Below are positions 23,038-31,878 of a stretch of DNA of 64,000 bases, one piece after another. Source of the stretch: Setoptus koraiensis (Eukaryota; Animalia; Arthropoda); assembly GCA_048013815.1 (NCBI GenBank), contig CM106586.1, positions 19,592,001-19,656,000 of the forward strand, given 5' to 3'. Positions within the stretch are counted from its first letter, which is position 1. Every line of letters begins with the position of its first letter. The position numbers and the translations under genes were made by a program. The notes beneath the pieces are model-generated. The model saw nothing but the letters and a program-made list of their open reading frames with translations. It searched no databases and was not told where the DNA came from.

Positions 23038-23833
23038 ATGCTGAGGACAAAAATTGTCGCAATATTCGTGATTCAGGCCTTGGTCCTGTATGACATAACA
23101 CTCTCAGTGGATGTTCAGCTCGTAAATACGCGCGTAAGTATTCTCTGAGAATGCGCCTCCCCGGCGTCCACTTAAAGGGTAGCAGCTGAAACATTTCCAT
23201 CTGATGGTGCTCGTTGTGTCTTCGGATGTCCTCTGTAAGAATTGCACAGAGAGTGAAAATCCGCGACACGAAAAATATAATGTGCTAGTGTTGCCTTTTT
23301 AGTCAGAAAAAAAAAATGTTTTTTCGATCACCCTTTACTTATTCATCAACCCATTAACCAGAAGCGAGTCGGTTTCACATTACCAAACCTTTTTTATCCT
23401 CAATAGAAAGAACTTGATGCACATCTCGAAAGATCGAAAAGCGGAGACAAACAAGTGGTTCTTCTCCATTTCACGACCTACAATTGTAAAGAATGGACGC
23501 CGTGCAGAAACAGCCTTAAAGTTATAGACGAAATCGATCCTATGTTCGTCAAAAAAATGGTCATACTCAGAGTTATCGCTGAATACCCGGACGTAAGTTA
23601 TTCTCCATGCTGTCACTAATGATTGAGCAACCACAATTTATTCGCCTAAATAATTTATAATGAAATGTCCTTTTTTTCCCCAGACGAAAAAAATGCAGGA
23701 AGATTTTGATGCCGGCATTCCAGGTATTGTTATATTCAAAAAAGGGGTCAAGGTTAGAGAAGGGTCATTCGATGCGAATGACGAAGGTCGGCTGTCATTT
23801 ATTTTGCAAATCAATCTATTGAAACCAAAGTAG
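23038..23833 (+). CDS. Secreted thioredoxin-like protein TrxL-A (143 aa), CX5C site CKEWTPC
   Basis: join(23038..23133,23407..23592,23684..23833), phase-0 GT..AG introns. MLRTKIVAIFVIQALVLYDITLS signal + KELDAHLERSKSGDKQVVLLHFTTYNCKEWTPC...LRVIAEYPD|TKKMQEDFDAGIPGIVIFKKG (Trx cis-Pro and FKKG strand). Confidence 0.85.
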
Positions 23834-24329
23834 TCGTTAGAGTAATAGTAGCCCAAAGTTATATTACTCTGCTCATTTCCCCGGGAATCAATGCACAACA
23901 CACTCTTGGAAATGGCGAAAGAACCGATCGGTCAGCTCACTTACAACACTTGTTAGCCGTTCTACACATTCAGTGTTTACTGGGTACAGTTTATATTTCA
24001 ACGCACACTCGCGGTGCTTGTAAGCCAGCGAAGCAAATGTATCAAACAATATTCTGACAAAAATAAATTGCATCAATTTGGACTGAGTAATTTTCTCATT
24101 ATTAGACAAATCCAGAATAGTCTAACAATATTCGCTGATAATTTCTTTTCCTGAGTGATAATTCGTTGGTGTTCACATCTCTCGCTCGCGGCAAAGAGAG
24201 AATGCAGTGCTTATAAGAAAGAGTTAATCCTGGCCGATAAAAGAAAATATTTATGTGCCACGACGATGTAACAACAGCGCAGTAATGCTGGCAAGACTAC
24301 ATTATTGGGGCCCAATGATTGGGCACAGT

Positions 24330-24965
24330 GCAAAAGTTTCACTCACTAGGCAACCCAGTCAGATGCTCGTGTCAGAGGGGCTGGCTATGGCCTATCTGTT
24401 TCCGGCTGGTCGAACTGAGCAAGAATACACTTTTCCGATGCCCTTTTTTTGCCCACTCTCTGCAATATCCTTCATGATTTTCATGACCGAATTTCTGGCA
24501 AAATGTTGAATGATTAGCGTATTGGTGACCGCCCCAACACGAATCATAAATAGATCTCAGCTTTTAGATTATTTGAAGACGGCGCTATTTTATGACATCC
24601 GATGAGTGGTGTCTAGCATGATTTCATCATGCATGTTGAGGGTCCATCTCAATTAATGTGCTATGTGTCTGAACAACCGAGACGCCAATCACTAATTCAA
24701 ACAATAAAATCGATTAGAATCACACAAAAATTTATAAGGTCTGTGAGCTGTAATAAGATTTTGATTTAGGTTAATAAGTACCCGACAATGAGGATTCTGT
24801 GCGAAATAACCGAAATTTATGTCGAAAAATTCTGCTAGAGTATTGCAGAAAGTGGGCAAAGAAGAGCACAAGAATAGTGTATTCGGGCTCAACTCGATCA
24901 GACGGAAAGAGATAGGCGATAGCCAGCCCCCTCTGAAACTACCACCTAAGCGGGTTACCTTGTAA
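24330..24965. repeat. Module V: direct fragment (24330-24500) plus inverted copy (24510-24965) of 32040..32520
   Basis: Shared strings e.g. GGCTGGCTATGGCCTATCT and GGCGCTATTTTATGACAT on the two strands. Confidence 0.8.
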
Positions 24966-25041
24966 GCTAAAAACGGCTGATTGTTACATCAATCGGAATA
25001 GAGAGAATTTATTTTTGCTTGGATATTGTTCAAGATTCATT

Positions 25042-25645
25042 CTAGTAATAAATTTTAGGAAAATAATGGGGATAAGTTTCCCTTATTTTAGCGTAACAAT
25101 TTCCGGTAAAAAAGTCAGTCGGTCCTCCTTGCTTGAATGCAATACAATGAGGCAGCCTTTCTTTGTCTATGTAATAAGATTTTGCCACTGGCTGTATGAG
25201 GAAAAACAGAACATTCAATTAGCAAATCAATCAGCGTGATTCAATCGCGGGTGGAAATATGGAGAATGACTTACTTCATCGACGTCAATTCGAATGAATT
25301 GTACCTTGTCACCATTTTGATGGATTAATTCGGTTACTTTGTACGCTTGTTCATCGCAATGATAACAATCATTATGCTTCTCAAAGAGAGCAATAACCAA
25401 TTTGTCGCCGGCCTTTTTCAAATAGGCATCAAGGTCTTTCTAATGGGGAGAAAGGAGGTGTGAGAATGTGATGTCGACCCGCCTCTAGTTAATAGGTTGG
25501 TGAATAGGAAAATGGTCGCTGTTGAGGCGCATTCTCAGCGCATACTTACCCGTGTTTTTATAGTCACGTCATCCAATGAGAGTGTTATGTCACACAGGAC
25601 CAAGGCCTGAATCACGAATATTGCGACAATTTTTGTTCGCAGCAT
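25042..25645 (-). CDS. Secreted thioredoxin-like protein TrxL-B (136 aa), CXXC site CYHC
   Basis: complement(join(25042..25191,25275..25439,25550..25645)). MLRTKIVAIFVIQALVLCDITLS signal + KDLDAYLKKAGDKLVIALFEKHNDCYHCDEQ...FIRIDVDE|PVAKSYYIDKERLPHCIAFKQG; AGDKLV, IDVD and cis-Pro are thioredoxin hallmarks. Confidence 0.88.
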
Positions 25646-29540: not shown

Positions 29541-29651
29541 TTTTTACTCATTGCCGGAGTCGCTTAATCGAGCAAATACCATAGATTGAATTTAATCACT
29601 AACTATACTATAATCTTGATTACATTTCAACCCATTTTTTCTCCTCAATAG

Positions 29652-29887
29652 GGTTAGTCCTCATTTGTGATCTTGAGGGGCACTTAGCAAAAGTCGGCAA
29701 CAGATTTATTCTGCTCGCCTTTTACAGAGAATCTTTTCCATTTTATAAAGCTCTGGAACTTATGGTCACTGAGTATGAAATCTCATACACACCGTCATGT
29801 GTTCTATTCAAAGATGGACATATGGTCGCCAAGTACGATACTGATAGCGGAGAGCATTTGAAGCATTCACTTTATAATCATTTCTAA
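29652..29887 (+). pseudogene. Internally deleted relic of a TrxL-C-type (Cys-less) thioredoxin-like gene
   Basis: After a CCTCAATAG acceptor: DLEGHLAKVGNRFILLAFYRESFPFYKALELMVTEYEISYTPSCVLFKDGHMVAKYDTDSGEHLKHSLYNHF*; exons 2 and 3 fused by deletion, no exon 1 or in-frame start found. Confidence 0.7.
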
Positions 29888-30712
29888 CGGCCCAATTATA
29901 TCTGACTCATTTCACCTGAAATCAATTCGAAACACACCTACGGTGCCTGTAAGCTGGAGAAGCAAATGTATCAAACATTGTTCTAATAGAAATAAATTCT
30001 ACTAATAGGGATTGAAAGATGTACCCAATTTGAAACGATTGTTTGTGTTCATATCTCTCGTACGTGGCAAAGAAGCAAAAAGATGAAAGATGAAAGCTCA
30101 AGTGCAAATGTGAGATGGCGCTTCTTTTCGTAATGCAGCGGTGATAACGTGAGCTATGGCAATCATTTAAGGACTTTTCCCGGGTGATAACTTGTTAATG
30201 TTCATATCTCTTGTACGCGTCGGAGAGAATTTAGTGCCAATTAAAGAGAGACGCTTCTGAGTTATCCCGGTCGATACAAGAAGAGATCAAAATGCCTCGA
30301 CAAGATAACAACAGCGCAATAATGTCGACAGAATGGCAAGACTCTTGCGGCCTTTCAGTCAACAGGTACGATCGTGGTGCAGGGGTCGATATTTAGCATT
30401 TTCTTCCCCTATGCGCAGAATCGTATTACCTGAGACCAAGGAGTAGTTTCAAACTTACGCTCTCTTCTGCGCAGGGGACTTCATGCTACTCTAACCTGCG
30501 TATCTTTATTTCATGAAACATGTTTGTGATCGTTTGCCCGTATAAAAGCTATTGGTTACGTATTCGGATTTCACAGTATCAGCACTCCTTATTCGAGGAT
30601 ATCTCCCTCACAGCAAACATCCGAAATTGAGCTAATTAATATAAAAACTTCAAAAACAACAGCAAATAAATACTGTTCGCTCGCCGTCAAAATAGACATC
30701 AACTAACTAAGC

Positions 30713-31878
30713 ATGCTGCAAACAAAAATTGTCGCAATATTCGTGATTCAGGCCTTCGTCCTGTATGACATAACACTCTCATCGGGACTCTCATCAGGTG
30801 ACGCGACTATAAAAACACGGGTAAGTATGCGCTGAGAATGCGCCCCATCAGCCAGCATTTTCCTATTCATCAACCTAATAACTAGAGGCGGGTCGACATC
30901 ACATTCCCACACCTCCTTTCTCCCCAATAGGAAGATCTTGATGCCCAGTTGAAAAAGGCCGGCGACAAATTGGTTATTGCTCTCTTTGAGATGCATCCCT
31001 GTCAATATTGCAATGATCAAGCGGACAGAATACACGCATTAGCGCATTATCACAATAGTAGCAAGCTGCAACTCATTCGAATTGACGTCGATAAAGCGAA
31101 AGTAAGTCATTCTCCATATTTCCACCCGCGATTGAATCACGCTGATTGATTCGCTGATTAAATGTTCTGTTTTTCCTCACATACAGCCAGTGGCAGAACA
31201 TTATAGCATAGACACGGCAGCTCTGCCTCATTGTATTGCATTCAAGCAAGGAGCACTGGTTGAGAGATATGCCGGACATTGTTACGCTGGAATGAGGGCA
31301 ACTTTTCCCCAACTTTTTCCATCGTTAAATTATGTCACCATAAAATCAGGCGTAAGTATGAGCTGAGAATACGCCTCATAGGCGACCATTTACTTATTCA
31401 TCAACCTATTAACTAAAAGCGAGTCGGCATCACATTACCACACTTTTTTTTATCCTCAATAGCAAGAAATTCAACAGCATCTCGAGAGATCGAAAAGCGG
31501 AAACAAACCATGGGTTCTTCTCTATTTCCGAACCACGAATTGTGCCAAACAATCGTTTTGCATGGATAGCATTGCTGCGTTAGACGAAATAATACCAAGC
31601 TACTCTGGTAGGATTTTGGTTGTACTCAGAGCTATTATGCATCACGGAGATATTGATGTAAGTTATTCTCGGTATTGTCTCCCACGATTGAATGACGACG
31701 ATTTATTAGATTATTCAATGTCCTTGTTTCTCCTCATTCACAGGAATTGGCCGAACAATATGGCGTTCATGATATTCCGGGTTTTATTGCATTCAAAAAA
31801 GGGGTGAATTATGGTCAGGTGCCCGGATATCCCAGACATAGGCTTGAGGACGCTTTGTATAGGGTTCTACATCATTAA
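30713..31878 (+). CDS. Secreted two-domain thioredoxin-like protein TrxL-D/E (257 aa): CQYC domain + CAKQSFC domain
   Basis: join(30713..30820,30931..31101,31187..31351,31463..31657,31744..31878), all phase 0. Domain 1 is paralogous to TrxL-B and domain 2 to TrxL-A; exon 3 runs without a stop into an exon-1-like tail SLNYVTIKSG|GTAAGT. Confidence 0.82.

What the first reader, a model, noticed from the sequence alone, without database searches (positions are those of the whole stretch)
23485..31563. Active-site diversification across paralogs: CYHC, CQYC, CKEWTPC, CAKQSFC, none
No copy keeps WCGPC. B and D have CXXC with aromatic or His inner residues (CYHC resembles glutaredoxin/DsbA-type motifs and would shift the redox potential). 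A and E have a 5-residue spacer (CX5C), which is rare in the Trx fold. C and the relic have lost the motif. Each subtype occurs twice, so the variants were maintained through a duplication. This suggests sub-functionalisation into reductase, oxidase/isomerase, metal-binding or decoy forms.
Basis: partly seen in the sequence, partly recalled or inferred. Interest (0 to 1): 0.72.

Follow-up and report, generated by a model that had tools for sequence, protein, structure and literature searches.

The report
Fast-evolving secreted thioredoxin-like gene cluster
An arthropod genome carries a small cluster of genes for secreted proteins that derive from ordinary thioredoxin, have lost its catalytic signature, and change fastest around the old active site, which suggests an effector-like family and not a set of specialised redox enzymes.

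Summary
No WCGPC copy is in the window. There are four intact spliced genes, each with a signal-peptide exon followed by half-domain exons. All introns are GTAAGT..YAG and phase 0. D and E are two domains of one 5-exon gene (257 aa), formed by an in-frame fusion.

Exon profiles match arthropod cytosolic thioredoxins in the PDB (E 8e-8). The CXXC of B and D falls on WCGPC. The second Cys of A and E falls on Cys35, and their loop is about 4 residues longer. The cis-Pro is invariant, but Trp31, Gly-Pro, buried Asp26 and Pro40 are replaced in every copy.

B and D are recent duplicates. Their non-coding DNA differs by 5.9% and their mature-peptide exons by 19.8% (p 8e-11). dN/dS is 1.8, and changes cluster in the active-site loop and surface helices.

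No close relatives appeared in three protein searches. Similar secreted, degenerate Trx clusters exist in a gall midge and in other arthropod contigs.

Best reading: a diversifying secreted Trx scaffold. Redox sub-functionalisation and expression are untested. The scan had already noted the D-E fusion on this window.

The parts
23038..23833 (+). Gene A, 143 aa. Exon 1 23038-23133 (signal peptide), exon 2 23407-23592 (Trx N-half with CKEWTPC), exon 3 23684-23833 (C-half with cis-Pro, stop TAG).
   Evidence: Sequence read. GTAAGT..YAG introns, phase 0. Exon homology.
25042..25645 (-). Gene B, 136 aa. Exon 1 25645-25550 (signal peptide), exon 2 25439-25275 (CYHC), exon 3 25191-25042 (cis-Pro, two further Cys, stop TAG). 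AATAAA lies 29 nt after the stop.
   Evidence: The N-half model has pLDDT 86, with Cys25 as the N-cap and Cys28 in the first turn of helix 26-41. The model superposes on Trx structures at TM 0.88, rmsd 1.0 A.
27679..28269 (-). Gene C, 130 aa. Exon 1 28269-28174 (signal peptide), exon 2 28064-27906 (active-site loop deleted, no Cys), exon 3 27816-27679 (cis-Pro kept, 7 His).
29597..29887 (+). Relic of a C-type copy. The N-half is joined directly to the C-half, beta3 and intron 2 are deleted, and there is no signal-peptide exon upstream. Probably a pseudogene.
30713..31878 (+). Gene D-E, 257 aa, 5 exons: 30713-30820 (signal peptide), 30931-31101 (CQYC), 31187-31351, 31463-31657 (CAKQSFC), 31744-31878 (stop TAA). 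Two Trx-like domains in one reading frame.
   Evidence: all four introns are GTAAGT..YAG and phase 0. The N-half model of E places Cys33 in the first turn of helix 31-47 and Cys27 in the preceding loop.
31334..31462 (+). Fusion joint. The last codons of D exon 3 (VTIKSG) and intron 3 are homologous to the tail of the signal-peptide exon (ATIKTR) and intron 1. B ends with a stop at the matching place.
   Evidence: Local blastn matches 30806-30935 to 31337-31467 at 80%. Sequences.
22000..23037 (+). Conserved upstream block of about 1 kb shared by genes A, B (26646-25646, inverted) and D (30073-30712). Probably a common promoter and 5' UTR.
21957..22010 (-). Isolated fragment of a signal-peptide exon (relic).
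   Evidence: tblastn, 78% over 18 aa.

Best explanation
The locus holds four intact genes (A, B, C and the D-E fusion) plus relics. They form a lineage-specific family of secreted proteins descended from the ordinary cytosolic thioredoxin of arthropods by gain of a signal-peptide exon. The fold-defining elements are kept: core strands, the cis-Pro loop and helix alpha2. The catalytic apparatus is dismantled: no Trp31, no Gly-Pro, no buried Asp26, and in C no active-site loop at all. The Cys pairs that remain are even in number in every mature protein, so they most likely form disulfides in the secretory pathway. In A and E this would be a CX5C staple across an enlarged loop. In B and D it would be the CXXC pair plus a second pair (the Cys after the cis-Pro and the Cys after beta5). 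The proteins therefore act mainly as stable, disulfide-framed binding modules whose old substrate-binding face is being reshaped under diversifying selection. That is the pattern expected of secreted effector, saliva or venom-type proteins in a molecular arms race. Shown here: the gene models, descent from Trx, the Cys positions, loss of the catalytic residues, and faster divergence of mature-peptide exons than of introns. Inferred: secretion, disulfide state, the binding role, and delivery to another organism. B and the D domain could still exchange disulfides with a shifted potential (about 1 in 3); classical reductase activity is unlikely.
For: Gene models have canonical phase-0 introns and intact frames in all four genes despite 20-80% divergence. 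N-terminal exons have n-region Arg/Lys followed by about 13 hydrophobic residues. The N-half exon profile hits shrimp Trx and Drosophila TrxT, Trx-2 and Deadhead (E 8e-8 to 1e-5), with CXXC aligned on WCGPC. The C-half profile hits the cis-Pro, beta4, beta5 region. The cis-Pro is invariant in six copies. The alignment with 23 Trx N-halves shows that Trp31, Gly33-Pro34, Asp26 and Pro40 are replaced in all copies. The fold of B's N-half (pLDDT 86) has the canonical Cys geometry. In the fold of E's N-half (pLDDT 71), the second Cys is in the first helical turn and the first Cys is 4 residues before the helix. For B versus D, non-coding differences are 48/810 (5.9%) and mature-exon differences 60/303 (19.8%), Fisher p 8e-11. 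pN is 0.239 against 0.057 in introns (p 8e-8). NG86 dN/dS is 1.77. I counted 17 codons with 2-3 changes where about 1 would be expected at the intron rate, and the core strands show no change at all. Cys counts per mature protein are 2, 4, 0 and 6. Neighbouring genes in the same 40%-GC island are also orphan secreted-protein families. Similar secreted, degenerate Trx clusters occur in Contarinia nasturtii and in other arthropod contigs.
Against: There is no expression or splicing evidence. dN/dS above 1 for B/D is not significant on its own (Fisher p 0.12). dS in the exons (0.16) also exceeds the intron divergence, so homogenisation of non-coding parts by gene conversion could explain part of the contrast. 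A/E give dN/dS 0.66 with near-saturated dS. Signal peptides were judged by eye. Only half-domains were folded, with ordinary Trx in the alignment, so the models lean on Trx. The host or target organism is unknown.
Confidence: 0.6

Rival explanations
1. The copies are sub-functionalised redox enzymes: B and D are oxidase or isomerase-like CXXC proteins with a shifted potential, A and E are a new CX5C catalytic or metal-binding form, and C is a decoy. Each has a maintained, distinct biochemical role.
For: The Cys pairs are kept within each pair despite heavy change around them. The CXXC sits at the canonical helix N-terminus. His or aromatic inner residues recall DsbA, PDI and glutaredoxin motifs (established knowledge). 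The copies contain many His: 7 in one C exon and 14 in D-E. The cis-Pro loop is kept in all copies.
Against: Asp26, Trp31, Gly-Pro and Pro40 are lost in all copies. The inner residues differ even between the recent duplicates B and D (YH versus QY) and differ completely between A and E (KEWTP versus AKQSF), which does not look like a tuned, maintained motif. Replacements are as dense on alpha2, alpha3 and alpha4 as in the motif itself. D and E are one protein. No assay has been done.
Confidence: 0.2
2. The contrast between conserved introns and flanks and divergent exons is mostly concerted homogenisation (gene conversion) of non-coding parts among old paralogs. On this view the proteins evolve under relaxed constraint, not positive selection.
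For: dS in the B/D exons (0.16) is higher than the intron divergence (0.057; p 0.03). The ~1-kb upstream block and the signal-peptide exon are 87-95% alike among A, B and D, although the A domain is very different from B and D. The same explanation was proposed for Hessian fly salivary gene families (PMC2955719).
Against: Identity drops and recovers inside exons, at structural elements and not at exon borders. There are 42 and 30 nt runs with no change in the core strands, beside codons with 2-3 changes. All frames stay open in four genes. Selection against homogenising the mature peptide would still be needed.
Confidence: 0.15
3. The genes are decaying, unexpressed duplicates (pseudogenes in the making), and the motif variety is drift.
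For: dN/dS is near or above 1. There is one clear relic and one stray signal-peptide fragment. There is no RNA evidence. No annotated protein of the family was found in the large collections.
Against: There are twelve intact splice sites and no stop or frameshift in 666 codons at up to 80% divergence. Exon divergence exceeds the neutral proxy 3-4 fold, which drift cannot do. The Cys pairs, the cis-Pro and the core strands are conserved.
Confidence: 0.05

Closest known systems
Arthropod cytosolic thioredoxins (Drosophila Trx-2 1XW9/1XWA, TrxT 6Z7O, Deadhead 6ZMU; Litopenaeus vannamei Trx 3ZZX)
   Same: Same fold and domain length. The shared motifs are 'AGDKLV', the core strands and the cis-Pro loop. 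The CXXC of B and D lies on the same columns as WCGPC.
   Different: The window genes have a signal-peptide exon. They have no Trp31, Gly-Pro, Asp26 or Pro40. The loop is enlarged (A, E) or deleted (C). One gene has two domains. They evolve very fast. Identity is 17-44% on the N-half exons and 18-27% for A and E.
Contarinia nasturtii (swede midge) tandem Trx cluster, including XP_031625956 (uncharacterized protein LOC116342464)
   Same: Tandem genes for Trx-like proteins with degenerate motifs (WCDYS, WCEYN, CQEC, none). One is a two-domain protein of 240 aa, and two of them begin with a hydrophobic N-terminal stretch that I read as a signal peptide.
   Different: Similarity to the window genes is only weak (about 35-40% over one N-half). 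The Contarinia cluster sits beside a canonical WCGPC Trx, and the window has none. Whether the two share an origin or arose in parallel is undecided. No CX5C form is present there.
Hessian fly SSSGP salivary gene families with 'unusual conservation' (Chen et al. 2010, PMC2955719)
   Same: Clustered tandem and inverted copies. The promoter, signal-peptide exon and intron are highly conserved, while the mature-peptide coding part is highly diversified. That paper invokes positive selection plus homogenisation (compare).
   Different: Those families are not described as thioredoxin-derived, and the organism is different. This is a likeness in evolutionary mode, not homology.
Thioredoxin-like effector TRX3 of Edwardsiella piscicida (PDB 5ZPV) and other Trx-fold pseudoenzymes
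   Same: A Trx-fold protein delivered outside the producer and described as an effector, not a housekeeping reductase. It appeared among the fold matches.
   Different: It is bacterial and secreted by a type III system, and it is unrelated in sequence (18% identity, TM 0.54).

Membership tests
Thioredoxin fold / thioredoxin family (Pfam PF00085) | Sequence match to the family model above its curated threshold | tested here: inconclusive
   Single exons score below the gathering cut-off: PF00085 E 0.05-0.2, AhpC-TSA E 0.0025. Only half-domains could be scanned, because the joined protein has no reference. Exon profiles do hit solved thioredoxins at E 8e-8 (N-half) and 5e-5 (C-half).
Thioredoxin fold / thioredoxin family (Pfam PF00085) | beta-alpha-beta N-half with the active site at the N-terminus of helix alpha2 | tested here: met
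   B N-half model: H2-10, E14-20, H26-41, E46-52. Cys25 precedes the helix and Cys28 is in its first turn. TM 0.88 and rmsd 1.0 A to Trx structures. E N-half model: the same elements, with Cys33 in the first turn. The models were built with Trx sequences in the alignment.
Thioredoxin fold / thioredoxin family (Pfam PF00085) | cis-Proline loop before beta4 | tested here: met
   The Pro is invariant in all six C-half copies and aligns with Pro76 of solved Trx.
Catalytically competent classical thioredoxin (disulfide reductase) | WCGPC active site | tested here: not met
   The motifs are CYHC, CQYC, CKEWTPC, CAKQSFC, or none.
Catalytically competent classical thioredoxin (disulfide reductase) | Buried Asp26 and Pro40 that tune Cys35 and helix alpha2 | tested here: not met
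   The Asp26 column holds L, L, L, L, T. The Pro40 column holds Y, D, K, A, and in C it falls in the stretch shortened by the loop deletion.
Catalytically competent classical thioredoxin (disulfide reductase) | Reduction of substrate disulfides and recycling by thioredoxin reductase | not testable with these tools
   This needs recombinant protein assays.
Secreted effector or salivary-type gene family under diversifying selection | N-terminal signal peptide | tested here: inconclusive
   Exon 1 has the form MLRTKIVAIFVIQALVLYDITLS, with basic, hydrophobic and polar regions. It was judged by eye; no predictor was available.
Secreted effector or salivary-type gene family under diversifying selection | The mature peptide evolves faster than neutral sites | tested here: met
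   For B versus D, exons differ by 19.8% and non-coding DNA by 5.9%, p 8e-11. dN/dS is 1.77, which alone gives p 0.12. This was tested on one recent pair only.
Secreted effector or salivary-type gene family under diversifying selection | Expression in a secretory gland and delivery to a host | not tested

The most novel reading that the evidence does not exclude
The thioredoxin fold has been turned into a hypervariable, disulfide-framed recognition scaffold. The former substrate groove carries an enlarged CX5C-stapled loop in one subtype and a proline-free CXXC in another. It is diversified by accelerated evolution of exon segments, as in venom toxins. It can be combined by exon-phase-compatible fusion into multi-domain effectors. 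The same route may have been taken independently in several arthropod lineages (this genome, gall midges and other arthropods).
Probability: 0.3. Interest if true: 0.7.

Novelty: new variant of a known kind. Interest (0 to 1): 0.5.

Why it matters
If these proteins are secreted into a host or prey, they are an example of a housekeeping redox enzyme recruited as a fast-evolving effector scaffold. The locus also preserves a clear natural record of how this happens: gain of a signal-peptide exon, loss of catalytic residues, loop enlargement or deletion, and in-frame domain fusion. It gives concrete, testable candidates for effector work in a poorly studied arthropod. It also points to a recurrent class of secreted, active-site-degenerate thioredoxins in arthropods on which five literature searches found nothing.

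Tried and rejected
1. An early idea of a fungal or oomycete effector island, prompted by the GTAAGT introns and the AT-rich island. I rejected it because the flanking genes are a RhoGEF/PH gene with polyQ, a giant cadherin and a P450, and the cadherin's nearest feature cluster is mainly Arthropoda.

2. The gall midge as source organism. The mode of evolution and the Contarinia hit suggested it. However, the P450 has no named relative above 34% identity and no close Trx kin were found. Other notes of this scan call the animal a mite, which I did not verify. I did not try to break the coded organism names.

3. RNA evidence. The look-up of sequencing runs listed no run on record as RNA. I sent no stretch containing those places to any search tool afterwards and masked them in the later self-comparison.

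4. A word search with the E domain and with a mixed alignment found no close relatives. The exhaustive profile search found 36 hits, mostly ordinary Trx, and none from this genome.

5. Pfam scans on single exons gave only sub-threshold hits.

6. Literature searches for secreted Trx-like effectors in mites, gall midges and plant parasites found nothing on this family.

7. A canonical Trx neighbour in the window, as in Contarinia: none was found.
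Full report
**What is there**

The finding lies in a 27-kb stretch of about 40% GC (14-41 kb). It is flanked by conserved genes with large exons at 53-59% GC: a RhoGEF/PH gene with polyQ upstream and a giant cadherin downstream. The genome is therefore an animal's. The cadherin's nearest feature cluster is mainly Arthropoda. Other notes of this scan call the animal a mite, which I did not verify.

Reading the DNA and searching the window with exon peptides gives four intact genes with one common plan. Exon 1 has 32-36 codons and encodes a signal-peptide-like N-terminus (MLRTKIVAIFVIQALVLYDITLS...). 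The next exon encodes the N-half of a thioredoxin domain and the one after it the C-half. Every intron starts with GTAAGT, ends with YAG and is in phase 0.

- Gene A, + strand, 23038-23833, 143 aa, CKEWTPC.
- Gene B, - strand, 25645-25042, 136 aa, CYHC.
- Gene C, - strand, 28269-27679, 130 aa, no motif.
- Gene D-E, + strand, 30713-31878, 257 aa, five exons, CQYC in domain 1 and CAKQSFC in domain 2.

A C-type relic (about 29597-29887) lacks strand beta3, intron 2 and a signal-peptide exon. A stray signal-peptide fragment lies at 21957-22010.

**The observation**

The correction is that D and E are not separate paralogs. The end of D's third exon (VTIKSG) and the intron after it are homologous to the tail of the signal-peptide exon (ATIKTR) and intron 1 (30806-30935 versus 31337-31467, 80%). 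B has its stop codon at the matching place. An E-type gene therefore lost its promoter and most of its signal-peptide exon and was fused in frame to a D-type gene. Another first-stage note (s1-318788) had already proposed this fusion on this window. The sequence evidence here agrees with it, but no transcript evidence was obtained.

**Descent and geometry**

A profile of the five N-half exons hits solved arthropod thioredoxins: shrimp 3ZZX and its mutants, and Drosophila TrxT, Trx-2 and Deadhead. E-values run from 8e-8 to 1e-5, and the two Cys align on WCGPC. A profile of the C-half exons hits the cis-Pro, beta4, beta5 region (E 5e-5). The cis-Pro is invariant in all six copies.

I aligned the exons with 23 Trx N-halves.
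- D has no indel relative to Trx, so PCQYC lies on WCGPC.
- B has one extra residue before the first Cys.
- In A and E the second Cys aligns with Cys35 with no indel downstream, while the loop before it is about four residues longer. The first Cys sits six residues upstream of the second instead of three.
- C has the loop deleted.
- All copies have replaced Trp31, Gly33-Pro34, the buried Asp26 and Pro40.

I folded half-domains exon by exon.
- B's N-half (pLDDT 86) has Cys25 just before helix 26-41 and Cys28 in its first turn. The model superposes on human, insect and Drosophila Trx at TM 0.88 and rmsd 1.0 A.
- E's N-half (pLDDT 71) has Cys33 in the first turn of helix 31-47 and Cys27 in the loop four residues before it.

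The models were built with ordinary Trx in the alignment and cover half-domains only.

**Mode of evolution**

B and D are recent duplicates inside an inverted segmental duplication. Over 810 aligned non-coding positions (upstream region and both introns) they differ at 5.9%. Over the mature-peptide exons they differ at 19.8% (Fisher p 8e-11).

Nonsynonymous differences per site are 0.239, against 0.057 in introns (p 8e-8). Nei-Gojobori dN/dS is 1.77, which on its own is not significantly above 1 (p 0.12).

The changes are patchy.
- The core strands (LKKAGDKLVIALFE, IRIDVD, LPHCIAFKQG) carry no nucleotide change at all.
- The active-site loop and helices alpha2, alpha3 and alpha4 carry most of the changes. 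I counted 17 codons with two or three changes, where about one would be expected at the intron rate.
- The Cys are kept, while the residues between them change: YH versus QY, and KEWTP versus AKQSF.

A and E are an older pair (dS about 0.87, dN/dS 0.66). A, B and D share a ~1-kb upstream block and the signal-peptide exon at 87-95% identity, although their mature parts are very different.

This is the pattern described for Hessian fly salivary gene families: conserved promoter, signal peptide and intron with a diversified mature peptide. Positive selection and concerted homogenisation were both invoked there (PMC2955719). Either way, selection favours or tolerates variety in the mature protein while it preserves the fold.

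**Relatives**

A word search with the E domain found nothing. A search with a mixed alignment found only ordinary Trx and one Contarinia nasturtii protein. The exhaustive profile search of 1.84 billion representatives gave 36 hits at E up to 0.001, mostly ordinary animal Trx, and none from this genome. The family is therefore lineage-specific, or its lineage is unsampled.

The same theme recurs elsewhere.
- In the gall midge C. nasturtii, four Trx genes lie in tandem. Three are degenerate (WCDYS, WCEYN, and a two-domain protein with CQEC and none), and they sit beside a canonical WCGPC gene.
- One unnamed arthropod-like contig carries three tandem genes: a secreted WCGPC Trx and two fusions with WCPWS or no Cys.
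- Another contig pairs WCAPC with WYESC.
- Five literature searches found nothing on such families.

**Interpretation**

The best-supported reading is a secreted, disulfide-stabilised Trx scaffold whose old substrate face is diversifying. It is an effector-like or saliva/venom-like family and not a panel of tuned redox enzymes.
- Cys counts in the mature proteins are even (2, 4, 0, 6), which fits disulfides formed in the secretory pathway.
- B and D carry a second Cys pair, one after the cis-Pro and one after beta5. Its positions in the Trx fold suggest a clamp across the beta4-beta5 hairpin. This is an inference.
- Residual disulfide-exchange activity of the proline-free CXXC domains is possible.
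- Metal binding is also possible, given 7 His in one C exon and 14 in D-E.
- None of these was tested.

**Limits**

- There is no expression or splicing evidence. The look-up of sequencing runs listed no run on record as RNA. I kept those places out of all later searches and masked them in the later self-comparison.
- The selection test rests on one recent pair.

Noticed in passing
window 18256-18777, 19809-20369 (+), 21094-21714 (-): A pair of paralogous orphan ORFs with signal peptides (mature part starting D-x-SHCD), plus a third orphan ORF. None has a Pfam match. They lie just upstream of the Trx cluster in the same 40%-GC island.
   Followed up: partly
window 33181-39564: Three copies of an orphan secreted acidic protein gene (MAAYKLALL..., 155-180 aa) at 33274-33795, 36617-37159 and 38553-39020. 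The last two lie in about 1.9-kb tandem units that are 89-98% alike.
   Followed up: partly
window 33860-35553 (-): A divergent CYP3-clan cytochrome P450 in two large exons. The best relatives are unnamed Logan contigs at 53-64% identity, and all named relatives are at or below 37% identity.
   Followed up: partly
L001 7110-13843 (Contarinia nasturtii VYII01000852.1): A tandem cluster of four thioredoxin genes. Three have degenerate motifs (WCDYS, WCEYN, and a two-domain protein with CQEC and none) and sit beside a canonical WCGPC gene. This parallels the window's cluster.
   Followed up: partly
L003 295-4820; L005 2606-4190: Logan contigs of unnamed organisms with tandem intronless secreted Trx genes. 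L003 has one with a signal peptide and WCGPC, and two with a signal peptide, an MBF2-like domain and a Trx domain carrying WCPWS or no Cys. L005 pairs WCAPC with WYESC.
   Followed up: partly
window 27682-27816 (-), 31744-31875 (+): The C-terminal exons of the family contain many His: 7 of 45 residues in gene C, and the D-E protein ends in HH. Metal or pH dependence is possible but untested.
   Followed up: no
window 22000-32600: The exons of the Trx-like genes are 38-43% GC, against 53-59% in the conserved flanking genes. The young secreted-protein genes do not share the composition of the old genes.
   Followed up: no
They lie in a repeat between genes B and C, outside all gene models.
   Followed up: no
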